From positions 3,100,001 to 3,164,000 of the forward strand of contig NC_088858.1 of the NCBI RefSeq assembly GCF_963853765.1: 64,000 nt of DNA. Reading direction: 5' to 3'. The position numbers and the translations under genes are program-made. Position 1 is the stretch's first letter; the number at the start of each line of letters is the position of its first letter. Under the pieces are notes generated by a model that was given only the letters and a program-made list of their open reading frames with translations, had not been told where the DNA came from and searched no databases. Source of the stretch: Magallana gigas. Lineage: Eukaryota. Below, piece by piece: positions 4,601-19,600 of this stretch.

Positions 4601-7600
4601 ACTCTTGCATGAATTGCTTTCACTCGAATAGAGGTGTGACATTTTATTCCCCAGAATAAAATAACTAAGAATTAAAAATACAGTTCATCAGCTTTTATTT
4701 TCTAATATCATATAATAATTTTACATGATTATACTATAAATATTCCTTTCTCTACCATAATTGCTCCTTTCGCTTGCACACGCATATAACACAAGTTCAA
4801 GTATCATAATGAATATACATGTCATCAAAAATCCATATAGAGTGGAAGCAACTATAAAAATAGCAACTATTTTAAAGACGTAATTCCTATCAGAATTGCC
4901 CCTTTCTCTTGCACATGTACATAATACAAGTAGCATAATAAATATACATGTCATCAAAAATCCATATAGAGTGGAAGCAAATATAAAAATAGCAACTATT
5001 GTAAAGACGTAAGTTCACATCATTTTAGAAAAAAATATCAAAAATGAGTAAGCATGGTGGCAGAACAGGATGCATTGAAATAAGGAAAAGAAAGTTCAAT
5101 GACTGGACATCACTCAAAAATAATTATTTAATGTACGAGAGTCGATTTCTACCCATTAAATGGGCACCTCAACAATAAGGTACGGCGTTCGCACTGAAGT
5201 ATCATTAAATAATTAAGATTTGTGTTTTTTAATTGTCTGGGTCCTTTCATTGACCTTCCTTTTCCTTTGACCTAATTTTTTCCCCAATGACCGTGGCTTG
5301 ACAATGGTCGTAAGTCCGTCTGTTGATGTCACAGTTTTTTGTCTTTAGGCCTGAAACTACGCAAACGTTTGTAGTGTCGGTCCCGTTCGTCTGTTGTTTT
5401 TGAAGCCCATACTGTTTTAGACATTTGGAATTGCTGGTGAGAATCTGTCCGATCGACACCAGCGCCCGTCGCATGCCCTTGTACTGAGCCTCAATTAATG
5501 AGGTCAGTATGTCAACCAAGTCAAGGAGAGGTTTTGACTTCCAGTCAATGGCCTGTTTGAGAACGTGGTTTAGGGATTCCGAATTATTATTTGTCCAAAC
5601 ATTTTCAATTAAACCTGAAGATAATGGTTTTTGAACTTTGTTTTTTAGATTTGGTTTGCGTTTCTTTTCAATTACAGTAATTGTGTTCATTGACCGCTAA
5701 AGAGATATATAGAGATATATCAGAAGTTGTTAGATATCTGTATTTGTGTGCTGGATATTAGTAGGTTGAAGATATCTGTTTATCTTTGATAGATGTAAGT
5801 AGTTTGTAGATATCTGTATCTGTATTTCTGTTATAGATATTTTTGCTTGTGTTATCTGTATTTTGATAGAAGATGTTAGTATTTATTTCTGTTGTAAATA
5901 TTAGTATGTTTTAGATATCTGTATTTCTGTTATAAATATCAGTATGTTATAGATATTTATTTCTGTTGCAGATATCAGTACTTTTGTTGCAGATAACTGT
6001 ATGTTGTAGATATCCATAATTCTGTTGTAAATATACATGTAAGTAGGTTGCAGATATCTGTGTTTCTGTTGTAGGACCCCTGATAGAGGAGGACCAGATC
6101 CTACAAGCCATGCCTAGCGTGGTTCTTGCTCTCCACGTCCTCTGTGAGAGACGACAGCCCGACTCCTTCTGGGAACCATACATTAGTATCCTTTCTTCAA
6201 TGATTATCTGAAAGCATATTTTCATAATAATGAGCTCCATTATGAAAGAATCTAACTGTTCGGTCTTCCTGAATTTTGCTCAGTTGATGGGCCTAAAATG
6301 AGAATTTGTTTGCAGTTGCCTTTGCAACTGACCTACTTAAAAAACCTCAATATTTAAGTTTTGAATTTTTTTTATGTTAAAGTTTCCAAATATATATCAA
6401 AAAATCTGTTTTGGATTTTTGAGTCGGCTCGCGAAGCGAGAAGACCCTTGCTGTTACCGGCAAGCTCGGATTTTGAGCACAACCGTGTTATAATCTTGCG
6501 CGAATGCAGATAGTTCTCATATTCTTACCCGTTTTATTATGAATAAAAGGTGTTATGAATGTCTTTTCTTTTAATATTCCATTCTTTAAATATCAATCGT
6601 TTTATAACTTCATGAAGACTCGTGTTATAAACCTTCCATTAATCACATTTCGGATATTTAAATGAATTAACGTATTCGCGCGTACGAATACATTGTTTAT
6701 GAACGACTTGTCTACTTACAAAATACCACGTGACATTTTTGCGGGAAAAATAGCGTGTGTTTACAGAAGAGTTGGAAGACGAGTACGAGTGTAACGAAAG
6801 CAACCTGAAGAAGTAGAAATAGACACATCGTAAGTTCTGAATTTTTGCATATTCTTATAGATGCTCAATTATTGTGTTATTTAAGGAGGAATCTCGTATG
6901 TTTAGAAAATCTTTTCCTGTTTTCTTTATAGCATGCAATGTAAACAAACGGGGGTTAATGATCCGTTAATCCAGATTGGCTATTTATAATAATCCGTCAT
7001 AAATAGGGAACGCTAACTTCAAACTGTAGTTAATTTACGTGATGACAATTAATTACTGCAGAAATTGCCGTAAATAATTCAGATTTGGTGTTTGCTCGAA
7101 ATAAAAAAGGAAAACAATAGCGTTTGAATCTTGTAAAATTAAGCACAAAAATATATTAAAGACTTTGTGTGTTTACATTGTGTTGAATTCTAAAGGAAAT
7201 TTTACTTGATATTGTTTGAATTACTTTGATTTTGTGCGAAACTTGTCATTTATATGATCTTGGAGATGATGTAAAATTGAATGCATTTATTGCTTTGACT
7301 TGGAAAAAACCCATATAATTGCTTGGAGATTGATCTTGGAGTTGATGAGATGACAAAAGTTGCTTGGAGATATATTATATTGTCTTTGGAGTGAACATTA
7401 TACAAGTTACATAATATTGAAATATAAAAATATCAAACAATGGGCATCGACTTGGAGACTTGGAGATCAAGAATTGGGACCCATTTTAGTTATTTAAGAA
7501 AGAAATCTTATCTCAGTTCTTTGTTTTCATCAAAGTGGATAAAATTTGATGTCAAAAAATATTTACTACTATGTTCAATATTATTGGTTTTGTGTGGTGA

Positions 7601-10600
7601 TGTTGAAGAAAATCCTGGTCCGCCACTTAATTTTCCAATTAGAGGTAAAATACACCAAGGTGATGATATATTCAGTTTAGATTCCCGTGGAAGACAATGT
7701 GTGTCATGTTGCTTGAGTTTTTTCTTGAATGTAATGATAAAGCCACTGAATTCAAAGACCTGGTGTTCTGATGATTTGGATACAGTGCTATACATTGGTG
7801 ATTACATTTACAGACATTCAAAAAAGCATATGAAACACCATGAAGAATATTTACTAGTAAACGATTTGCCAAATTATGTCACTATTGAAACCAATGCATT
7901 TTCTTGGACAAAACGTAAAACATATTTTGGAAATATTTCACCCAGTTTTGCTGCTGAATACCCTTTACTGCGTTTAGAGTTTGCACTCTCCATGTGTCTA
8001 TCAATTGACACCTTTGCGATCTTTGTTTGTAAAGGCAATGCTTTGGGAATTTCTCATTTTGAAGACCAATTTGTTGTCTTTGATTCTCATTGTAGGAATG
8101 AACAGGGTTTTTGTTGCAGTGAAGGTGCTAGTATATTAGTAAAAAAAGCAAATGTTTCTGAAATATGTGATCACATTAGATCCCTTTTCAAATCTTTTAC
8201 ATCTGATGGTACTAAGCAATTAAATGAACAATTTGAATTACATGGATTAGTCATTAGAAAAATAGCCATGACATCAATATCTAGATATAAAAGCAATGGA
8301 ATTGCAGTTTGCACCATACCAAGTGATGTCTTTCATGACACAACTCAAGAAATACTATTAGATAATGTATCATGTAGTTCTAACAACTTTAAACCCAAGA
8401 GTTCAAATAGATTTACCTTAGTAGATTTACCATTTGGGGACATTTCAGATAGTAACATTCTTAGAAAAAGAAAACGGGAAGGTCTAAAAGCATCTAGTAC
8501 ATTTGACACAAAAAGAAAAAAGAGTAATGATGAAACAGATGTGTTAATTGAAAAATTCCATAATTTGACATCAAAGGGACCAGAATATGTGTGTACTTCA
8601 TGTTGTCAAATATTTTTTAGACATTCTGTAATAATCATGAAAACTAAGAATTTCAAAGCATGTCTGATAAAGGATTGTGTAAAGGGCATCAAAAGTGTCA
8701 GTGGCATTGAATATATTTGTTATCAGTGTAATAATTATCTCAAGAATAGTGAAGTACCACCTTGCTCCATTGGTAATAATATGAGCTTCCCAGATGTTCC
8801 AGATGAGTTGAAAAACCTCACACAGCTAGAACAGCTGTTGATATCTCCTAGAATCCCCTTTATGAAAATAAGAGAATTACCAAGGGGTGGTCAATTAGGC
8901 ATCAAAGGCAATGTTGTTAATGTTCCTGCAGATGTAAACAAAACAGTTAGATTGATTCCAAGAAACATGAGTGAGAGTGAGACTATACCTGTTAAATTTA
9001 AAAGAAGCCTTAATTTTAAAAGTCATTTAGCATTTGAACAAGTACGGCCAGAAAAAATTCTAAAAGCTGCTAAATGGTTGGTAAATCATAGCAACCTTTT
9101 TCAAAATGAAGGAATAAGTGTTAATGAAGATTGGATGGTTGAATCTCAATTTGAAAATCCTTTTGTGCAGGAGAATGAGCATAATTTTTGTGATGAAAAT
9201 AATGAAACATTTCCTCAAAGTGATATTGAAGGGGATCAGAACAATGAATTAGAGGCAGGAAATTTGGACACACTTTTACATCCTGCAGACTTTAGAGAGT
9301 TTAATAGAATACTAAGTCTTGCCCCAGCAGAGGGAAACACACCTCTTAGTATGTTTCAAGACAAGTTTTCAGAATTCCTCTGTTTTCCTGGTTTATATTG
9401 TGGCCAACCTAGGGAGGATAACAACAAAAGGATTACACCTGTGCATTACAGTACCATTTGTAAATGGGAACTACGAAATGTTGACCGAAGAGTAGCACAA
9501 AATGTAACGAACATCTTTTACAAGCTGAAAAGAGTACAAATAAAACAAATTACTGACAAAGTGACATTGGCTATGAGAAAGTGTAAACTAAAAGGTAAGA
9601 AAGTCACAGTTGGTGAAATGCTTTCCGATGACAGTGTGAACAAAATTTTAAAATTGGATCAAGGTTACAAAATATTAAGAACACTTCGTGGGTCACCACC
9701 ATACTGGGAACGTGCCAAAAAAGATATTTTTGCCATGATACGGCAGCTTGGTGTACCAACTTGGTTTTGTTCTTTTTCATCTGCAGAAACAAAATGGTTA
9801 CCACTATTACATTGCCTAGGCAAACTTATTGATATGAAAGATTATTCTGATGAAGAGTTGTTGAATATGCCTTGGGCAGAAAAGTGTAGACTCATAAAAT
9901 CTGATCCAGTAACTTGTTCTCGATATTTTCACCATAAAGTGCAGGTATTTCTCAACACAGTATTGAATAGCAGTATTAACCCTGTAGGGAAAGTAAAAGA
10001 TTATTTTTTCCGTGTTGAGTTTCAGCAAAGAGGTTCTCCTCACATACACATGTTGATATGGATTGAAAATGCGCCATCAGTTCTTGCAGACAGTTTTGAA
10101 GATGTTGCTGATTTCATAGACAGATATGTTACTTGTAAACAAAACAATGACATAAAGGAACTAATTAATTATCAGACGCATAGACATGCCCACACATGTT
10201 TGAAAAAAGGTAACAAAATTTGCAGATTTGGTTTTCCTTTGCCCCCACTGCATAAAACCATGATTTTGCAAGGATTGAAAAAGAATTCAAATGAATTCTT
10301 AGAAGCTCAAAAGAATTACTTGAAAATTGAAACTTTATTAGATGAAATGAAATTGGGAACAGAATTGCCAGTAAAATTTGATGACTTTTTGATATCTTTA
10401 GATTTAACATTGACTGATTATATAACAGCTTTAAGATCAAGTGTTAAAGAAGGGCAATGTAAAGTTTTTTTAAGGAGAAATACATCAGAAATAAGAGTCA
10501 ATAGTTACAATGATACACTACTGAAATGTTGGGAAGCAAATATGGATCTGCAGTATATCCTTGATCCATATGCCTGTGCAGCATATATTGTGTCTTACAT

Positions 10601-13600
10601 ATCAAAAGGACAACGAGGTATGTCAAACTTACTTAGACGTGCTTGTGAGGAGGCAAAAGAAAGCGATAGTGATATAAGGCAACAAGTAAGAAAGGTTGGC
10701 AATGTTTTTCTGAATCATATTGAAATTGGGGCTCAAGAAGCTGCCTACATTCTCTTGCAAATGCCTTTAAGAAAAGCAACTAGAGAATTCATTTTCATTA
10801 ATACTAATGTAGAAGATGAGAGGGTAGTTTTGATAAAACCCACTTCTATTTTAAATGAAATGCCTCAAAATTCTACGTCCATAGAGGCTGATAACAATTT
10901 GAAAAGATACCAAAGACGTCCATTCACTATGGAAAAGTACTGTTTAGCTGAATATATTGCTTGCTTTAATGTTATTTTCTCGAAATGTAAGGAAAGACAG
11001 GATGAAAAGGAAGGTGAATTGCTCGAAGATAATTATGATCTAGACAATGTTGATAATCCTCATGAAACTGATGAGAGCAACATTGATAATTTTGATGAAG
11101 TTCATTTTGCAAAGGATGGCTCTATCTTGCGAAGGAGGAAAGTTGAGCGCATAATCTATTCTGTGGGATTTAACAAAGATCATGATAAGGAAAATTATTA
11201 TAGGGAATTGCTAATGCTCTATATTCCTTGGAGAAATGAAAATACCATAATTGGAGAGAGTAACTCCTATGAAGAAAGATGCTATATCTGTCAAAATACT
11301 ATTCAAAATGTAAGAAAAAAATTTTTCCAATCCAATACTGTGGATCTATATGAGATTGAAAGAGAAATTCGCTATGATGAGGAAAGTCATTCAACAATAG
11401 TAACAGAAATGCAAAACAAGGAAGATAAAGATACCTGTGATGGTGCAAGAAGTGCAAAAGAGTATGGCTGTTTTAACCCTGATGTAAATGGTGAAGAAAA
11501 CTATGATCTAGGATTGGATTTTGGCATAGGGAGAAAACAAGTTTCTAATTGTGATGAGCAATTAAGTGGTGAAATGTTAGATTCAGAGTATAGGGAATTA
11601 GTCCAGTCTCTCAATCAGAAACAGATGGAATTTTTTTACCATGTTCTTCATTTAGTTAAAACTACAAATGATCCAATTTACAACTTTTTGTCGGGAGGTG
11701 CAGGAGTAGGAAAAAGTGTGCTTTTGAAAGCTTTGTATCAAGCTTTGATTAAGTTTTATTCTCGAAAAGCAGGCGAAAATCCAGATGATTGTTCTGTATT
11801 GGTTTGTGCACCAACAGGAAAAGCAGCATACAATGTTGGGGGGTTAACGATTCATTCAGCTTTCAATATTCCTGCTGACCAAGGCTTCAAGTTTAAACCA
11901 CTAGACATGCAGCAATTATGTTCTTACCAGGCAAAATATAAGTCTCTTAAGATGATTTTTATTGACGAGATTTCAATGGTTGGAAAAAGAATGTTTAACT
12001 TTATCAATTTGAGGCTTCAAGAGATCATGGGATCTTTGATACCATTCGGTGGAGTGTCTGTTATCGCTTTTGGAGATTTATTTCAATTAAAACCGGTAAG
12101 GGATGCCTGGATATTTTCTTCTGGTTACAGTTCTGGTAATGAACTTGAAATTTTAGGCCCAAATTTGTGGCAAGATCTATTCTCATTGTTTGAACTGACT
12201 GAAATAATGAGACAAAAAGATGATCTACGGTTTGCTCAGCTTTTGAATAGGCTAAGGGAAGGAAATCAATCACCTGAAGATTTAAAATTACTAAAAGAAA
12301 GAGAGATAGATTGTGAAAATAACATCACATTGAAAATACCACATCTGTATACAACAAGGAAAGAGGTAGCTGAATTCAATGCAACAGTGTTTGAAGGTGC
12401 ATTCATGGGAAGGAAAACAACTGTAGAAGCTATTGATTCAATAGCAGGAGACTTGTCCTCTGAAATCAAAGAAAAGATATTATCAAAAATACCATTAGAT
12501 AGTTCAAAAACTAAGGGTTTGTCAAAGTTTCTAAATCTTGCTGAGGATTTGCCTGGGGAGTTAAGTATAAATGTTGATGTCAGTGATGGACTAACAAATG
12601 GAACACCATGTATTATAAAAAAGCTTGATTACAGAGTTTATGCATCTAAAAGATGTAGCATTGTTTGGGTTCTCTTTACCAGTTCAGATATTGGTAAAAA
12701 ATGTAGAGTGCAATTTTCTCATTTGTATAACAGTGACATACATTTGCTATGGACTCCTATTCTTGAAGTTACAAGAAAATTCCAATACAATTATTACAAT
12801 TCCTTCCAAATTACTAGGCGCCAATTTCCAGTTGCTTTGGCATCTGCTAAAACTGTGCATAAAGCTCAGGGTTGTACTCTTTCCAGTGCAGTTGTCCACT
12901 TGGGATCCAAAAAACTTGATCATATGTATTATGTAGCATTAAGTCGTGTACAAAATTTATCCTCCTTGTATTTGTTAAAATTTTTGGATGAAAATATAAA
13001 GGTTTCAAGTGCTGTAGAAGAAGAAATGTGTAGACTAAGACATAGTGCCAATGTCCAGTTATCAGTACCAGTTTTTTATGATGTAACTAAATTTCAGATA
13101 ATTTATCACAATGTTCGATCCTTGCACAAGCATGTTGAAGATGTAAAGAGGGATGTTCTTTTTAAAAATGCAAATATTCTTGCTTTTTCTGAAACTCGTT
13201 TAACAGAGACAGATATTTCTGCTTTGTATGAAATCGATGGCTACAACTTGCATAGATATGATGAAAAAAAAGATGATATTAATGATAGGCCTTATCATGG
13301 ACTTGCAGTATATTACAAACACTCCATGACTTTCAAAAATTTAGCATTCTTTGGAGTAGACATTGTACTTGGGAACTTGCTTTATAAAAACAGAAAAATA
13401 ATTTTATGTTTTCTATATTGTTCACCAAAAATTTCTGCAATGCACATTTTCAAAAAAGTATTCGAAAAACTATCAAAAGAGTGTGATTATTTTCAGATTC
13501 CCACAATAATAATGGGTGATTTTAATTACAGTGTAGAAACTTTGAGTGATTTTGTTTACAAGAAGTATTTGTTAAGGCAGGTTATTAACGAGCGCACAAC

Positions 13601-16600
13601 AAATTACAATTCATTAATAGACCATATATATACCAATTTGCATCCTGAAAGCATTTCTAAATGGGGGGTCTTGGAATCTTATTACTCAGACCACAAACCA
13701 ATTTATATTGATCTATTGTAGATTAAAAAATATCTCATAAATTCACAGTTTGATAGTCAAAATTTATTATTTTAGTCTTAGAGTATTGCCTGCTTTGTAT
13801 TCATTTTGTAATAATGCAAGTTGCACTCCATAGATAGTAAAATAACATTATTGATATCATTTTATAAATTTTATGTTGCACAATTAGAAATTGTACAGCT
13901 CATATATATCTAAAATTTTATTTTAGATGCCTACACTAGAAAGTTTGTTTAAAACCAAAAAAGATGGACCATACAGTGCGCCAGTTAATGTGAAAATTTG
14001 TGGAGTAGCTGGGGAGAAGACGTATGTAAATGCCAATGGCGAGGAGAAGAAGTATGCAGTCTTGGGCGTTGCTGACTCTTCTATGATAGCGAAGTGCACG
14101 TTGTACGATACAAGTAAATTAAAAGTTCTACAAGAGGGCAACTCGGTCATGTTGCTGAATGTTATTGTTAAAGACAATAACAGTTTGACTTTGACTACAA
14201 AGTCCAGGATCTCGAAAGTTGGGGATGTTAAAGTTTCGTCTGAAAAACAAAAAGCAGCTAGAGAAATAGCATTCCCACCAATGTCTTCAGAAGTCCCTCT
14301 GAAAGACATTGAGAAATCTCCAATAAAGAGCATGCTGTCTGTCAGAGGACAGATTGTCGCTGTAAGTATCTCTCATTTATTTTATCACACTCAAAATGAG
14401 GTTGTGAATAAATTGGTAAATCATGGAATTTATATTGCTGTTTAACTATTGTAAAACTCTTTAAGGATGTAATTAGTTCTTGCTCAGTTTTACCTGAAGT
14501 TTAATAAATGTTAATTATCTTTAAAGGAGGAAATTACCAGAACTGTTTCTGTAAAAGGCAGGGATACAAAAGTGAAAAGTCTAACCATCAAGGATGACAC
14601 TGGAAAGTGCAAGGTGTCACTTTGGCGTGACCTGGCAGCCTCTGAGATAGGGATTGGACAACATGTGAAAATATCAGATGTAGTTGTCCAAACTTACAAC
14701 AATGAGAAGTCTGTGTCCTCGACAACTCGCACCATTATTGAAGTAAGGGGATATAATAATGTGTTCATCAAAAAAAAAATTTCAATATTATTACTTAAAA
14801 ATTGATTTACAAATTTCTTGAGAAAAGCAATTTTTCCAGTTGCTTTTATGCAAATATTGTTTCATAATTCATCTAATAGCTCATTGAAGTTTAACCCACA
14901 CACTAAGCTCAAGTAAGAACCACTAAGCCAGAAGAGTTAATTAAACATTGTATATTTAACTTTTTTTGTTACGTCACCCTTTTCTCATGTGTAAGCTGTG
15001 GCCACAATATGCATGATATGTGCTTTAAATTTCACATATTATTTTTTAAGAAAAAATCTGTTAAATTTCTTGATGAAAAACTTACTGTCCAGATTAGACT
15101 TTATTGATGGGCCAAAATAAAACATGAATAATAATGCATGATGGATTTTATAGTTGTGTCAATCAAGAAACTAGGTGAAAATAAATGATAAAGTTTTAAA
15201 AGAGCAAAAACAAATGACTGAAAACAGGTGAGCTATAATGATTCTGGTAAGCATTGAAGGCATTTGAAGCACAGTTGTCTCTTCAAATGGAAACCATCAG
15301 CTTTTACCTTCCTTGTTTTATTTTAACAGGAAGTAGAGGCACCAAGATCAACTACTGTGACTTCCGAAATCATTGCTTTCAACATGGAAGATTCTTGTGA
15401 CATGTCTGTGGTCATTAACGATGGGGAGCTGTACCCTTCATACAAAGTGCAGTCTAGTATAATGGCAGCATATTTAAACTGCAATGCGGAAGACTTGGAT
15501 GATGTTCTTGCCACCAAATTGCCCTTTCAAGCAACTTTCAGCATTGAGAATGGAGAAATTGTAAACTTTGAGTAAATTTTTACACAATTGATATGTCTTG
15601 GTTAAGGATTCTTGAAAATTATTTGAAAATGTTTTTAGTTAATATTGTAAAATTTCTTAGTCCCTTTGCAAAGAAAAGGGATAAAAAAGACAATTGATCT
15701 TTTTTAAGAATGGAAATTAAACAAAATAGAGACAAAAGAATTTTAGTTCTTTTAATTTTTGAAAATTTTTAAACAAAGATGCGAGGCATGTTTACTTTCT
15801 CCTATTTTACTTGAAGTTATGTGACACGGTTTTTGTACATTTTTATAATGTTTTAATTAATACAAATGAAATTTTGATGTCTTTTGTTTAGAACCTCTCA
15901 GGTCAATCACTATGTATCTTTAGAACTAATTGACTTAGATCTGCATCCATATAAAGATCAGACTTTTTATGTAGCTAGTCAGTATTAACACACAAGCCCA
16001 TGGACTTTTTAAGTATCTAGTCAGTATTATCTTGTTAAATAATGTAAATTTGTAAATATATTAAAGAACATTTTTATGTGTATTCTCTCACATTTTTTTT
16101 GTTTTTGTGGTTTTCTTTTGTCATAAAGAACAAACTACATGTATGTAACAGTACATGTATAGACTTTAATTTTCCCTTTTTTGAATATTTTCTTGATAGT
16201 GTTTTTACTTAGTGTGATTTTTATTATTTTATTTTTAGTACCTGCAGTTATTTTGTTATGGTTCATATTTTGCCTTGTTTTCTTTCCACATGGAAAGTTT
16301 CATTCTAATAAATAAAATCATAGATGTATTAGTAAACATCTAATTTTCATAATACATGTATTTGATTTGCATTGCTAATGCAATGGTAATATTTTGCTGC
16401 TTAATGTTTGCTCCACATTAATTGTCTTGTGAGAACAATTAAGTGTGCATTAGTTCTATTTGCATTGTTATAAATTTTACTTTCATGTTAACTGAACATA
16501 CCTCTGCCTTTCATTTGTTTCAACACTTAAATGTGCATTATTTCATTGTCATTATCTGCCATATTGTTTCTCATCTGATATTGTCATTCTTAAGAAGGGC

Positions 16601-19600
16601 AAAGGAAAATATTTGCTTGATATACCTAAGCTGGTTTGTGATTGGATCATGTTAGGCCTATTCAGTATTAACAAAACATGAGTTCTAGTCTACAATTTTT
16701 ACATGGATTGTTTTTATGTGTATATGTACCCGGTATCATATTCCACAGGATTATTAGAGAGTTAACTTTTTTTTTTTAAACATTTTGGGGGTTTTTTTTA
16801 ACATTTTTTTTATACATTTTAGTTCACATTTCCATTATTTCATTTTATTGTCTATCATCAATGAATTGCAATCTTTACAACTTTTGTTATGTTTTTAATT
16901 TGAGTAGAATCACGAATTATAGATATACTTTGCTCATTAACACTAAATATTCAATTTCGGCGAGTATTATTTTCTTCGAATACAAACAGACCAAACGAAC
17001 ATACGAACATTAGAGTGTTTGTCTCATTTCATTTTTACATGTATCTTCTTAAACATGGCACTAGAATTTACAGATATTATTGTATCTGTTAATTAGTTAA
17101 TTCAAACTCAATTTCTTGAATTATTGTGCAGTATATATGACATTGGTTTTTTTTTTAAATCATTAATTAACTTGTAATTTTTTATTATGAAAAAATCTCA
17201 AACTGAACATATGTATAATTTTATATGCCATTTTCATTCTCTACATGTAGTTTTATATTTTATCTCCATGTTGTAGCTTTAGCTATTTTAGAAAGAGTTA
17301 TTCGGTTATAATAAAAAAAAAAAAACAACTTTTTGGTTTTCATATTCATTTAATTTTATATTTAAATATCTTTTTATCAATGGTTATTGGATTGAAGCAC
17401 TTGTCAATGATATGATATGTAAATGTTATACTAGTTTTCAATCGAACAATCCATTTCACTGGGGAAACAATGTTAATACAGAACATTTTTTTTATCTCAA
17501 TGCTTTCCTTTAAAGAGGCTGGATTGTCAACAAAATTAACCAACGGATATACCTTAAATTAAATTAGATATGGTATGTTAAGCTGTAAACTATTATTTAT
17601 GTGCTTTTTCCTATATATTTATATAGAGCCCTTTTTAAAAGGAAATCAAGACAGTCGTAAAATGGCCACAACCATTCAGCCCACTTTCAGTTCATGGTGT
17701 ACAATTCATTTCAATATTTTCTTAATGTGGTACCCATAATTTAACCTAATTTTTGGGGGAAATGTTATTTCAAAAACAGTCTCTGAAATGAGATTCAATA
17801 ACTTCAAGAAAAACAAAGAAGGTATTGTATCATCTCTTGCAGACCTTTAAATATTGACAAACATTACCAATAATATTTTCAACCAATGTAACGCGAGTCG
17901 ACTCTCAGGCCATTTAGGCCTTTGATTTTTAAATGTGTGTCAACACAGCTGTAAAAGACCTGTGTGAAAGGGGTGTTTCAATGAGATTACATGTTTTCCA
18001 TAATAAGTAAGGAATTCTTACTTGTATCTAAATAATTTTCACTAGACAATTATTGTTCAATAGAATATTAAATAATTAACATTTTTAGGTTATTTTCATT
18101 TTGCATAATAATACAAACCCTGCCTTGCACTCCAACCTTGCATTGATGAACTGTATTGGACTACATGTATATGTTATAAAATCAAGGTACACCCTTGTAC
18201 CTTACAGAAACACACGTATAAAGGAAGGCCAATTTAGTTCAGGAAAGAATGAGAACAATTAGCAATAATGTTAAAGTTATTCATTCAAAAACATTAGGGG
18301 TATTTAGAATGTCCTTAACCTTTGACACAGATGTCCTTCCTAACGAGTACACGACCCCTTTGTACTTCTCTCCAGAGGAGTTGCTTCAGCTCAAAGGTTC
18401 CCCTGCCCAAAGTAAGTGACTTTGATCCAATTACACAAAATAATAACTGAAACGAGGCAATATTTTGCAATACAATTACCGTCCTGTGTTTGTAGGTGAT
18501 TGCATTAAGCAGTACCGGAACATTGCCCGGCAGTATGCCTGCTTCTACAGAGTCTTTCAGGTCAGTGCAAATTATAGACCTTATTTTCCACTTTAAATAT
18601 TGACTGAAAAGGTTTATGCCATAAATAGGAGATATGTACTATAATATTTAATGTAATCTTTCAATTTGTTTGTTAGGATTAATGTATTTGACATTGTGGT
18701 TTAGTTTCATTGCTGAAATATTTCTACATCTTGCATTACAGACCAGCCAGAATGCTGAAAAATTACCAATCAAGGACTGCTTTACTTTTGATGATTACAG
18801 GTTTGTTGTAATTGTTTAAACCAACTGTCTGATGCTTTTACTGTTTCTCTGACAACTTGGGAATGAACCAGACAGGATATCCGTCTGATATTGGGTGACC
18901 TAGTATCAGTCTGATATAGATGGAAATAATATCAGTCTGATATTTGTTTGGAGTGACCTACCGGTAGTTATCCCTCCTCAGCTATTGTGTATCAACTGAC
19001 AAAGATCTTGAGTAAAACACAGGCCACTTTATAAATACATTCCTCTCTATTCTCATAATAAAATAAATAACAGGTGGAGCTCTTTATCAATTCATTAATC
19101 CAGACAATGGGTAGATGAGCATGTAATAAGTTATTTTATCATGGTTTCAGTGAACACTGAAGGATGCCACCATCTGTCTATCCAATAAATATGCATATTG
19201 GTGAGAATAAACATTATTGATCAATGTCTCTTTGTCCAACATCACTTGTCTGGAACATACTTTTTCTCCACTCCCCCCCCCCCCCCTTTCTTAGACCAAT
19301 CTGGCTCATACCTCACCCACAGAGTGTCTTTAGGTAAATATTGTGCAGACAAGGCTATTAAACCAAGTTTTTAGCTTAAAGATTAAGGTCATATATAGCA
19401 GATCTGTGTCTAAAGTCCTTGATAGGACTCCATTTTTTTCACCTTGGCCTTATCTGTCATATAATACACCACTGAGTACTTGTCAGACGAGATGTACAAG
19501 GATCTTGAACTAAATTTCCAAGTCAGAGGTTAAGGCCAAAGCGAAGTTCTCTGATACGCTTTATGAAAGGGGGCTCTTTTAGATGGTTACCTAATCAATG

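What the first reader, a model, noticed from the sequence alone, without database searches (positions are those of the whole stretch)
6416..17930. Complete, probably young autonomous Helentron inside a SETD3 intron
Seen: both asymmetric termini (13-bp subTIRs with one mismatch, a 5' GAA-loop hairpin, a 3' AGGCC/GGCCT hairpin, T-run flanks), a 6.3-kb ORF without a stop, and intact-looking HUH, Walker A/B and APE motifs. The element accounts for ~11.5 kb of the 12.1-kb intron 6186-18330. Inference: a recent, possibly active and polymorphic insertion. Intact autonomous Helentrons with defined ends are much rarer than their non-autonomous derivatives.
Basis: partly seen in the sequence, partly recalled or inferred. 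Interest (0 to 1): 0.7.

Follow-up and report, generated by a model that had tools for sequence, protein, structure and literature searches.

The report
Intact polymorphic Helentron in oyster SETD3 intron
This is a complete, protein-coding rolling-circle transposon (Helentron) in an intron of an oyster's SETD3 gene; other oysters lack this insertion and carry copies elsewhere, so the family moved recently, but such elements are common here and the kind is well known.

Summary
Window 6416-17930 is an 11.5-kb autonomous Helentron in a SETD3 intron.

What is there:
- 13-nt subterminal inverted repeats with one mismatch, a 5' GAA-loop hairpin, a 3' AGGCC/GGCCT hairpin and T-runs at both ends.
- A 2093-aa open frame: leader with 2A motif, tegument-like deubiquitinase, Helentron-type Rep, Pif1 helicase, AP endonuclease.

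Evidence that it is young and mobile:
- The genome holds three copies with identical ends and different flanks. One is 99% identical and also intact. One is broken by insertions.
- DNA contigs from two other studies carry the empty SETD3 allele.
- Three samples carry the element at sites that are empty in this genome.
- All 19 reads laid from a poly(A) RNA run are sense-strand. Their variants do not match this copy.

Related elements: a 66%-identical intact sister family and a ~940-bp non-autonomous family share the termini.

Why it is ordinary: this genome has over 130 Rep matches, dozens inside 2000-2900-aa open frames. Oyster autonomous Helentrons are in Repbase. This scan already reported another full-length Helentron elsewhere in this genome. 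It is a new member of a known kind, of moderate interest.

The parts
6072..6185 (+). SETD3 exon upstream of the insertion (matches human SETD3 residues 139-176)
   Evidence: PDB sequence search E 1.7e-11. RNA contigs of run X16 begin at 6072 and continue into the next exon.
6416..6420 (+). 5' T-run (T5). Ownership between element and target is ambiguous.
   Evidence: The run is T5 in 14 of 21 family members and T6 in 5. The empty allele has T8 in all.
6421..6433 (+). 5' subterminal inverted repeat GAGTCGGCTCGCG
   Evidence: Read. The first 20 nt of the core (6421-6440), which begin with this repeat, occur exactly at 16 genomic places and with up to 2 mismatches at about 39, against 3-4 for the reversed control pattern.
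6423..6445 (+). 5' hairpin: GTC..CTCGC-GAA-GCGAG..GAC. This is the inverted repeat complementary to the subTIR, as in HINE left ends.
   Evidence: Minimum-free-energy fold -5.9 kcal/mol. It is conserved in the sister and non-autonomous families.
6446..7439 (+). About 1 kb 5' leader. It is non-coding and holds 19 upstream ATGs. It carries CACGTG and an E2F-like GCGGGAAA at about 6738-6756. A possible intron at 6830-7406 is not supported.
   Evidence: RNA contigs run unspliced across 6563-7070 and 7081-8048, and no joints were found.
7440..13721 (+). ORF1, 2093 aa: the Helentron polyprotein
   Evidence: The frame is equally intact in the C10 copy. Between the two copies pN/pS is 0.23.
7440..7622 (+). 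61-aa leader ending in a canonical 2A/StopGo motif (LLVLCGDVEENPG|P)
   Evidence: The motif is identical in the 66%-identical sister element and detectable in 4-5 Helentron families of this genome. Its function was not tested.
7653..8105 (+). Tegument-like (VTD, peptidase C76) deubiquitinase domain. The catalytic Cys87 (GRQC) and His217 (FDSH) are present.
   Evidence: Pfam Herpes_teg_N E 2.6e-11. PDB 8ADD, a zebrafish Helentron VTD, E 2.3e-10, with both motifs aligned. Erven et al. 2022, PMC9741609.
8748..9134 (+). DUF6570 region, preceded by CxxC zinc-finger-like motifs
   Evidence: Pfam E 5.7e-23. CxxC pairs at aa 385 and 427.
9591..10610 (+). Rep (HUH) endonuclease domain, with Helentron-type motif 2 FFRVEFQQRGSPHIH and the two-tyrosine motif YIVSY
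   Evidence: Pfam Helitron_like_N E 4.1e-28. Motifs. The diagnostic signature is defined in PMC4067079.
11610..13080 (+). Pif1-like SF1B helicase (Walker A GAGVGKS at aa 1420, Walker B IFIDE at aa 1506)
   Evidence: Pfam PIF1 E 1.1e-25. PDB Pif1 helicases E 6e-30 and Helraiser 7LCC E 4.7e-17.
13107..13694 (+). C-terminal AP (apurinic/apyrimidinic-type) endonuclease domain
   Evidence: Pfam Exo_endo_phos E 5.3e-9, covering profile positions 3-225 of 225. Catalytic motifs HN, SET, GDFN and SDH.
13927..14361 (+). RPA-like gene, exon 1 (145 codons, first OB-fold-like half)
   Evidence: Read, with a GT donor at 14362. Weak replication factor A matches, E 0.0024. 59% aa identity in the sister element.
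14527..14742 (+). RPA-like gene, exon 2 (72 codons, OB fold)
   Evidence: PDB Replication protein A 3E0E E 1.4e-5. NCBIfam replication factor A E 4.5e-8. 76% aa identity in the sister element.
15330..15575 (+). RPA-like gene, exon 3 (81 codons plus stop)
   Evidence: Read. 39% aa identity in the sister element. The splice sites are inferred from sequence and reading frame only.
15576..17891 (+). 3' non-coding region. It is the most diverged part between copies (2.1%).
17509..17687 (.). About 180-bp dispersed repeat carried inside the 3' region. It is not tandem.
   Evidence: 239 first-look candidates at 68-88% identity. It occurs once per locus and TRF finds no arrays of it.
17892..17904 (+). 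3' subterminal inverted repeat CGCGAGTCGACTC
   Evidence: The 30-mer that includes it is exact only in the 3 copies, and a close variant occurs at 6 more sites.
17907..17921 (+). 3' hairpin AGGCC-ATTTA-GGCCT
   Evidence: In the sister and non-autonomous families the stem is kept while the loop changes to CTTCA.
17926..17930 (+). 3' T-run (T5 here, T4 in the other two copies, T2-T5 in the non-autonomous relatives)
18331..18411 (+). Next SETD3 exon (matches human SETD3 residues 179-200)
   Evidence: PDB search returns SETD3 chains only, E 0.025 for 28 aa. An RNA contig joins it to the upstream exon.

Best explanation
Window 6416-17930 is one full-length copy of a young, low-copy autonomous Helentron family. 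It is an endonuclease-encoding rolling-circle (Helitron-superfamily) DNA transposon. It lies in sense orientation in a T-run of a normally 0.64-kb SETD3 intron of an oyster, and the insertion still segregates in the species.

Shown:
- The element has conserved asymmetric termini.
- It left no target-site duplication.
- The target is a T-run.
- An empty allele exists.
- Other individuals carry insertions at other sites.
- Two copies have intact coding capacity.
- Sense-strand poly(A) RNA of the family exists.
- A non-autonomous family shares the same ends.

Inferred, by analogy with Helraiser and other HUH systems:
- ORF1 is translated as a polyprotein.
- Its 61-aa leader is split off co-translationally at the 2A motif.
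- The tegument-like deubiquitinase shields transposition proteins from degradation.
- The Rep domain nicks one strand at the 5' terminus and binds it through a tyrosine.
- The Pif1 helicase peels the strand off 5' to 3'.
- The 3' subTIR and hairpin signal termination and second cleavage.
- The RPA-like two-OB-fold protein coats the single-stranded or circular intermediate.
- The AP endonuclease nicks T-rich target DNA, and the strand is pasted in without duplication.
For: - Termini and their conservation.
- Three copies with identical ends and unrelated flanks. The C10 copy is 99.0% identical over 11,525 bp and also has an intact 2093-aa frame. The C5 copy is broken by three insertions.
- Domains and catalytic motifs. 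The Helentron-specific Rep signature is as defined in PMC4067079.
- RPA-like gene.
- Empty allele: contigs of runs X2 and X3, from two studies, run from the 5' flank at 6420 straight into TTT plus the 3' flank AAATGTGTGTCAACACAG....
- Non-reference insertions: the element's 5' end is joined to other flanks in X2, X3 and X16. Those flanks map to T6 sites without an element in this genome.
- Purifying selection: the ORF differs at 0.30% (10 synonymous, 9 non-synonymous; pN/pS 0.23), against 0.8-2.1% in non-coding parts.
- RNA: all 19 reads laid from poly(A) run X21 are in sense orientation.
- Non-autonomous partner: at least 18 full-length ~940-bp copies share the 5' 25 nt and the 3' ~36 nt.
Against: - No transposition event, circular intermediate or enzymatic activity was observed. 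Competence of this particular copy is not shown.
- The variants in the X21 reads (T6608, G7893, A8126) match the X2/X3-type copies, not this copy.
- RNA contigs of X16 include the 5' end joined to flanking DNA. They could therefore be read-through transcripts, pre-mRNA or DNA carry-over.
- The filled SETD3 junction was not confirmed in a run independent of the assembly.
- T-run bookkeeping is off by two. The filled site has T5+T5 and the empty site T8, while the constant 5' T5 would predict T6.
- The hairpins alone are not statistically significant.
- The 19 upstream ATGs in the leader argue against efficient translation from a 5'-terminal start.
Confidence: 0.88

Rival explanations
1. It is an intact-looking but no longer mobile relic. 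The family stopped moving some time ago, and the presence/absence differences are old insertions still segregating in a very polymorphic species.
For: - There are only three copies in this genome, one of them decayed.
- RNA is at a very low level (19 reads in about 1% of a large run).
- The non-autonomous relatives are old, 82-91% alike.
- No de novo event was seen.
Against: - Each of the three other samples has at least one insertion site that is empty in this genome, and the SETD3 insertion is absent from two of them.
- The copies differ by only 0.1-1%, with pN/pS 0.23 in the ORF.
- Two frames of 2093 codons are unbroken.
Confidence: 0.2
2. The 'empty' allele is not the ancestral pre-insertion site. 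It is the product of precise or near-precise excision or deletion of the element.
For: - The empty site has T8, where the constant 5' T5 of the family would predict T6. A small footprint is conceivable.
- Excision is reported for Helraiser. This rests on my own knowledge and was not checked here.
Against: - Three other sites show the same clean T-run empties.
- The empty form is the one assembled in both independent DNA runs, which fits a low-frequency new insertion.
- Length changes in homopolymers explain two T more simply.
Confidence: 0.07
3. It is an assembly artefact: a Helentron copy was wrongly placed in the SETD3 intron of this assembly.
For: No contig of X2 or X3 bridges 6420/6421 with this window's flank.
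Against: - The element's ends fall exactly within one T-run, and the two flanks are contiguous in the empty allele. A misjoin would not do this.
- The copy has private variants relative to the other two copies.
- The stretch contains no N.
Confidence: 0.02
4. It is a domesticated host gene derived from a Helentron, not a transposon.
For: The long frame is intact and under purifying selection.
Against: - It has complete conserved termini and several copies at unrelated sites.
- It shows presence/absence polymorphism.
- A non-autonomous family shares its ends.
Confidence: 0.01

Closest known systems
Autonomous Helentrons as defined by Thomas, Vadnagara & Pritham 2014 (PMC4067079), for example Helentron-Mo and the Nematostella families
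   Same: - Rep-helicase with a C-terminal AP endonuclease.
- Helentron-type Rep motif 2, with S between G and P and F-x-R before it.
- An extra RPA-like ORF and an N-terminal cysteine-protease/deubiquitinase domain.
- SubTIRs, with the 5' one a few bases from the end.
- A 3' subTIR followed by a short palindrome 8-35 bp from the end.
- Insertion in T-rich DNA without target-site duplication.
- Short non-autonomous partners (HINEs) that share only the ends.
   Different: - The RPA-like gene has two introns here. It had none in the mite element.
- ORF1 starts with a 61-aa leader ending in a canonical 2A motif. That paper does not mention one.
- The family is low-copy and very young.
Crassostrea gigas Helentron/HINE repertoire: Cg_HINE (Vojvoda Zeljko et al. 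2020, PMC7492417) and the Repbase Helitron-n_CGi entries cited there
   Same: - Same host group.
- Same left-end layout: subTIR plus a complementary IR hairpin.
- Same right-end layout: subTIR plus palindrome.
- One-mismatch subTIRs predominate in Cg_HINEs as well.
   Different: - Neither this element nor its ~940-bp partner carries a central satellite-like tandem array.
- That paper could not link any of the 10 Repbase autonomous Helentrons to its HINEs. Here an autonomous family and a HINE share their ends.
Helraiser / canonical Helitrons (PDB 7LCC)
   Same: HUH Rep with two tyrosines fused to a Pif1-like helicase (E 4.7e-17 to Helraiser). The presumed mechanism is rolling-circle 'peel and paste' without target-site duplication.
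   Different: - There are no 5'-TC and 3'-CTRR ends.
- The target is a T-run, not A|T.
- It has subTIRs and a 5' hairpin.
- It has AP endonuclease, deubiquitinase and RPA-like modules.
Helentron-encoded VTD deubiquitinases (Erven et al. 2022, PMC9741609; PDB 8ADD)
   Same: The N-terminal domain matches the zebrafish Helentron VTD structure (E 2.3e-10), with the catalytic Cys and His motifs aligned. The paper lists molluscs among the hosts.
   Different: There is a single VTD and no OTU domain. It is preceded by the 2A leader.
2A-like sequences at the start of APE-type non-LTR retrotransposon ORFs (Odon et al. 2013, PMC3708506)
   Same: A canonical D(V/I)ExNPGP motif sits near the N-terminus of a mobile-element polyprotein of a marine invertebrate that also encodes an APE-type endonuclease.
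   Different: The host element is a DNA (rolling-circle) transposon, not a retrotransposon. No held paper contains both '2A-like' and 'Helitron'.

Membership tests
Helentron (autonomous) | Rep/HUH domain with Helentron-type motif 2: (F/Y)-x-R-(V/I)-E-x-Q-x-R-G-S-P-H-x-H | tested here: met
   FFRVEFQQRGSPHIH at aa 856-870. The signature is defined in PMC4067079. Pfam Helitron_like_N E 4.1e-28.
Helentron (autonomous) | Two catalytic tyrosines (YxxxY) in Rep motif 3 | tested here: met
   YIVSYISKG at aa 1049. It is identical in the C10 copy and in the sister element.
Helentron (autonomous) | Pif1-like SF1B helicase fused to Rep | tested here: met
   Pfam PIF1 E 1.1e-25. PDB Pif1 E 6e-30. Walker A and B are present.
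Helentron (autonomous) | [quoted passage not shown] | tested here: met
   Exo_endo_phos E 5.3e-9 over the whole profile, aa 1890-2085. Catalytic motifs are present.
Helentron (autonomous) | Subterminal inverted repeats, with the 5' one 2-4 nt from the end and the 3' one upstream of a palindrome 8-35 bp from the end | tested here: met
   13-nt subTIRs with one mismatch at 6421-6433 and 17892-17904. The palindrome at 17907-17921 ends 8-9 nt from the 3' end. The exact 5' offset is ambiguous within the T-run.
Helentron (autonomous) | Insertion into T-rich sequence without target-site duplication | tested here: met
   Filled versus empty allele at SETD3. Three further reference-empty T6 sites. All 21 family members have a 5' T-run.
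Helentron (autonomous) | Accessory RPA-like and cysteine-protease/deubiquitinase coding capacity (frequent, not obligatory) | tested here: met
   RPA-like three-exon gene. VTD domain.
Helentron (autonomous) | Non-autonomous partners (HINEs) sharing the termini | tested here: met
   A ~940-bp family with at least 18 full copies. Its 5' 25 nt are identical and its 3' 36 nt are 89% identical.
Helentron (autonomous) | Actual rolling-circle transposition (strand nicking, circular intermediate) | not testable with these tools
   Only indirect evidence is available: insertion polymorphism and sense RNA.
Canonical Helitron (Helitron1) | 5'-TC and 3'-CTRR ends, 3' hairpin about 11 bp from the end, insertion between A and T | tested here: not met
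   The ends are T-run+GAGTCGG and GGCCTTTGA+T-run. The target is a T-run.
Helitron2 | Asymmetric terminal inverted repeats with Rep-helicase but no endonuclease | tested here: not met
   An AP endonuclease domain is present.
Cg_HINE-type satellite carriers | Central array of satellite-like tandem repeats between the two end modules | tested here: not met
   TRF finds no array of long-period (satellite-like) repeats in 6000-18500, only three short low-copy rows of period 12-13 nt, and nothing in the ~940-bp partner. The 180-bp repeat at 17509-17687 is dispersed, not tandem.

The most novel reading that the evidence does not exclude
The family may be mobile today, and its polyprotein may really be split by the conserved N-terminal 2A/StopGo motif. 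That would be the first 2A-type recoding signal described in a DNA (rolling-circle) transposon. It would sit in a natural Helentron with defined ends, a matching non-autonomous partner and known empty sites, which is a ready-made system for working out Helentron transposition. That mechanism has so far only been inferred from Helraiser.
Probability: 0.35. Interest if true: 0.55.

Novelty: new member of a known kind. Interest (0 to 1): 0.35.

Why it matters
Helitron-type elements are the most abundant transposon superfamily in the Pacific oyster genome. One genome paper (PMC7992393) found no autonomous elements and concluded that they are probably inactive remnants. Another (PMC7492417) could not link the autonomous Helentrons in Repbase to the non-autonomous ones it described.

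This locus is a concrete counter-example:
- An intact, transcribed family with insertion polymorphism.
- Exact ends and a filled/empty allele pair.
- A non-autonomous family that shares its termini.

It also adds 11.5 kb of sense-oriented coding DNA to a 0.64-kb intron of a conserved housekeeping gene, the actin-histidine methyltransferase SETD3. That could serve as a marker or affect splicing.

The limits on its importance are clear. The kind is well described. Dozens of similar intact frames exist in this genome. Polymorphic rolling-circle insertions in Crassostrea have been reported at population scale (bioRxiv 10.64898/2026.02.10.705023). This scan already reported another full-length Helentron with HINE ends in the same genome.

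Tried and rejected
1. 5'-leader intron (GT at 6830, AG at 7405-7406), proposed from the sequence. RNA contigs are continuous across it and no joints were reported. Not supported.
2. Central satellite array or microsatellite as in Cg_HINE. TRF found no satellite-like array.
3. The 180-bp multi-copy segment at 17509-17687 as a satellite monomer linking the element to a Cg_HINE. It is dispersed and occurs once per locus. Rejected.
4. Matching the subTIRs to the published Cg_HINE table. Supplementary Table S2 is illegible in the held copy, and the end motifs are absent from the text files.
5. Exact look-up of the 2093-aa protein in the protein collection. It is not present, so no public name or species label was obtained.
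6. The first dN/dS calculation used a frame shifted by one base. Its synonymous/non-synonymous figures are void and are replaced. The per-region mismatch counts stand.
7. Hairpin significance by shuffling. It is not significant for either hairpin alone.
8. Search for head-to-tail junctions of the family ends. Only one was found, with a G between the runs. This is uninformative about circles.
9. Not run, on purpose:
   - The large representative protein search, because the family scans had settled the protein.
   - Structure prediction.
   - Any search or fold of the joined three-exon RPA-like model or of a spliced SETD3 model. These were searched exon by exon only.

Full report
**Setting**

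The window is G000:C6:3100001-3164000 of a 564-Mb assembly in 29 contigs. The species name is coded and I did not establish it.

**Observation**

- The only long open frame in 6000-18500 is 7440-13721, 2093 aa, on the + strand.
- At the 5' end, T5 (6416-6420) is followed by GAGTCGGCTCGCG (6421-6433). This overlaps the hairpin CTCGC-GAA-GCGAG at 6428-6440.
- At the 3' end, CGCGAGTCGACTC (17892-17904) is the reverse complement of the 5' repeat with one mismatch. It is followed by AGGCC-ATTTA-GGCCT (17907-17921), then TTGA and T5 (17926-17930).
- A 13-mer with at most one mismatch placed this way at both ends has a chance expectation of about 1.6e-4.
- The hairpins alone are not significant against shuffles (z -1.2 and -1.9). 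Their weight comes from conservation.
- The flanking exons 6072-6185 and 18331-18411 match consecutive parts of human SETD3, residues 139-176 (E 1.7e-11) and 179-200.
- An RNA contig joins the two exons.
- The element therefore fills 11.5 kb of intron 6186-18330. Without it the intron would be about 0.64 kb. It lies in the same orientation as SETD3.

**Boundaries and copies**

Whole-genome searches with the two junction regions found two further copies. Their similarity begins at window 6415/6416 and ends at 17929-17937. Their flanks are unrelated.
- C10:31431155-31442660 is 99.0% identical over 11,525 bp and has the same unbroken 2093-codon frame.
- C5:2905883-2931492 is 94-98% identical. It is interrupted by insertions of about 4.3, 9.7 and 0.2 kb and has stops in the frame.

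Divergence between the C6 and C10 copies differs by region:

| Region | Mismatch |
|---|---|
| ORF1 | 0.30% (10 synonymous, 9 non-synonymous; pN/pS 0.23) |
| 5' leader | 0.8% |
| RPA region | 1.0% |
| 3' non-coding part | 2.1% |

. The frame has therefore been under purifying selection along the lineages that separate the copies.

**Empty allele and polymorphism**

I laid two DNA contig sets, one RNA contig set and one raw poly(A) RNA run on window 6000-11999.
- In both DNA runs (X2 and X3, different studies), a contig follows the 5' flank to 6420 and then continues with TTTAAATGTGTGTCAACACAGCTGTAAAAG. That is three T plus the sequence that lies directly after 17930.
- This is the empty allele, GGA-T8-AAATGTG.
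- No contig of those runs joins this flank to the element. Contigs show presence, not absence.
- The breakpoints lie inside the two T-runs as predicted, and there is no target-site duplication.

In the same runs the element's 5' end is joined to other flanks: four contigs in X2, one in X3 and one in the RNA run X16.
- Three of these flanks could be placed in this genome.
- At each place the genome has a T6 run and no element.
- So the SETD3 insertion is absent from two other samples, and each of three samples has at least one insertion this genome lacks.
- The variant patterns define at least three closely related haplotypes: C6-type, C10-type (also seen in X16) and an X2/X3-type.

**T-run bookkeeping (unresolved)**

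- Filled site: T5 + T5. Empty site: T8. Only two T are net-inserted at SETD3.
- Yet the 5' run is T5 in 14 of 21 members of this and related families, and T6 in five.
- The 3' run varies from T2 to T5.
- That pattern would fit about four element-owned T at the 5' end and predicts a T6 target, as seen at the three reference-empty sites.
- Homopolymer length variation is the simplest explanation, but I could not test it.
- Thomas et al. describe the same ambiguity (PMC4067079).

**Coding capacity**

ORF1 carries the following, from N- to C-terminus:
- A 61-aa leader ending in LLVLCGDVEENPG|P, a canonical 2A motif.
- A tegument-like VTD deubiquitinase at aa 72-222.
  - Pfam Herpes_teg_N E 2.6e-11.
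  - PDB 8ADD, a zebrafish Helentron VTD, E 2.3e-10.
  - Catalytic GRQC and FDSH are aligned.
- CxxC pairs and DUF6570.
- The Rep domain.
  - It has the Helentron-diagnostic FFRVEFQQRGSPHIH and YIVSY.
  - The signature is defined.
- A Pif1-like helicase with Walker A and B. Pfam E 1.1e-25, PDB Pif1 E 6e-30, Helraiser E 4.7e-17.
- A complete AP endonuclease domain with its catalytic motifs.

- It has three + strand exons, 13927-14361, 14527-14742 and 15330-15575 (298 codons). GT/AG borders keep the frame.
- Exon 2 matches Replication protein A OB folds (PDB 3E0E E 1.4e-5, NCBIfam replication factor A E 4.5e-8). Exon 1 matches weakly.
- The exons were searched one by one.
- The splice sites rest on sequence and on conservation of the three exons in the sister element (59, 76 and 39% aa identity). 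They do not rest on RNA evidence.

**Relatives in the genome**

- A sister family has the same 5' 20-mer, a 3' end that differs mainly in the hairpin loop, an intact frame 66% identical in protein, the same three-exon RPA-like gene, and an identical 2A segment. Its non-coding DNA is otherwise unalignable. Examples are C1:66893253-66904189 and C1:25840250-25852372.
- The leader with its 2A motif is detectable in four to five Helentron families of this genome.
- A ~940-bp non-coding family shares the 5' 25 nt exactly and the 3' ~36 nt at 89%. It has at least 18 full-length copies that are 82-91% alike, and 815 first-look candidates of which 40 were scored. It has no tandem array. It is a HINE-type partner of this clade.
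- The Rep domain has more than 130 matches in the genome. Dozens sit in open frames of 2000-2900 aa without stops. Intact autonomous Helentron frames are therefore not rare here.

**Expression**

- In the raw poly(A) run X21, about 1% of the run was read. All 19 reads laid on the stretch have the first mate on the minus strand, which in most stranded libraries means + strand RNA, sense to the ORF. None fell in the 200-bp intron flank.
- Their variants fit the X2/X3-type copies, not the SETD3 copy.
- RNA contigs of X16 cover 6416-11999 without splicing at depth 7-12. Depth is 0 in the intron flank and 72 in the SETD3 exon.
- One X16 contig carries foreign flank DNA at the 5' end, so read-through, pre-mRNA or DNA carry-over cannot be excluded.
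- Transcription of the family is therefore supported at a low level. Transcription of this copy is not shown.

**Mechanism**

Shown:
- Conserved asymmetric ends.
- A T-run target with no duplication.
- Presence/absence alleles.
- Intact catalytic motifs.
- A partner family with the same ends.

Inferred from Helraiser and HUH biology (my own knowledge, plus PMC4067079 and PMC9741609):
- Rep nicks the 5' end and is linked to it through a tyrosine.
- Pif1 unwinds the strand.
- The 3' subTIR and hairpin stop the process.
- The RPA-like protein coats the single strand.
- The AP endonuclease opens T-rich target DNA.
- The deubiquitinase protects transposition proteins.
- The 2A motif releases the leader.

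**Comparison with what is known**

- The element meets every testable defining feature of Helentrons. It fails those of canonical Helitrons, Helitron2 and the satellite-carrying Cg_HINEs (see the membership table).
- Already published:
  - Autonomous Helentron-type elements of C. gigas exist in Repbase.
  - VTD domains in mollusc Helentrons.
  - Polymorphic rolling-circle insertions in Crassostrea populations.
- One genome paper stated that no autonomous elements were detected and that oyster Helitrons are probably inactive. The present data contradict that statement.
- This scan had already reported a different full-length 16.9-kb Helentron with HINE ends elsewhere in this genome, and VTD domains in Helentron proteins. 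I did not re-test those notes.

**Verdict**

The finding is correct and well delimited, but it is an ordinary new member of a known kind in a genome rich in such elements. The least ordinary feature is the conserved 2A leader. It is the subject of a separate note, and I found no mention of it for Helitron-type elements in the held literature.

**Limits**

- Only one read-laying run was available, so the 3' junction, the assembled individual and the other two copies' sites were not examined.
- Repbase could not be queried.

Noticed in passing
window 7440-7622: ORF1 opens with a 61-aa leader ending in a canonical 2A/StopGo motif (LLVLCGDVEENPGP). The motif is identical in a sister element that is only 66% identical in protein, and it is detectable in 4-5 Helentron families of this genome. 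No held paper contains both '2A-like' and 'Helitron'. It is the subject of a separate first-stage note.
   Followed up: partly
L010:951-1914 (G000:C2:19686836-19687799) and at least 17 other sites: A ~940-bp non-coding family shares the 5' 25 nt and the 3' ~36 nt with this Helentron. Its copies are 82-91% alike. It holds a second internal copy of the 5' hairpin region about 310 bp in, and it has no satellite array.
   Followed up: partly
L076+L077 (G000:C1:66893253-66904189); also C1:25840250-25852372 and C8:42421288-42428040: A sister autonomous family has the same 5' 20-mer and a 3' hairpin with the stem kept and the loop changed (ATTTA to CTTCA). One copy has an intact frame of about 2124 aa and the same three-exon RPA-like gene.
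   Followed up: partly
window 17509-17687: An ~180-bp dispersed repeat (239 first-look candidates, 68-88% identity, once per locus) is carried in the 3' non-coding part of all three copies. Its kind is unknown; it could be a MITE- or SINE-like fragment.
   Followed up: partly
window 6738-6756: The 5' leader contains CACGTG (E-box) and TTTTGCGGGAAAA (an E2F-like site) about 700 bp upstream of the ORF1 ATG. The leader also has 19 upstream ATGs. The transcription start is unknown.
   Followed up: no
G000 genome-wide: About 100 sites start with GCGCCGGCTAGCGAAGCGAG. They have the same GAA-loop hairpin as this element but a different subTIR, so they are probably the left end of another, much more abundant HINE family.
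   Followed up: no
L078 (G000:C1:8939489-8939517, minus strand): A single end-to-start junction of family termini: ...AGGCCTTTGATTT G TTTTTT GAGTCGGCT.... It is either one element inserted at the T-run next to another, or a tandem.
   Followed up: no
G000:C5:2905883-2931492 (L059-L061): The decayed third copy is split by insertions of about 4.3 kb, 9.7 kb and 0.2 kb. One inserted stretch has a 478-codon and another a 315-codon open frame. I did not identify them.
   Followed up: no
window 6416-6420 / 17926-17930: The base before the 5' T-run is A at 13 of 17 sites, and the T-run target is often followed by A. The overall target looks like A-T(5-8)-A, reminiscent of the T-rich nick sites of APE-type retrotransposon endonucleases.
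   Followed up: no
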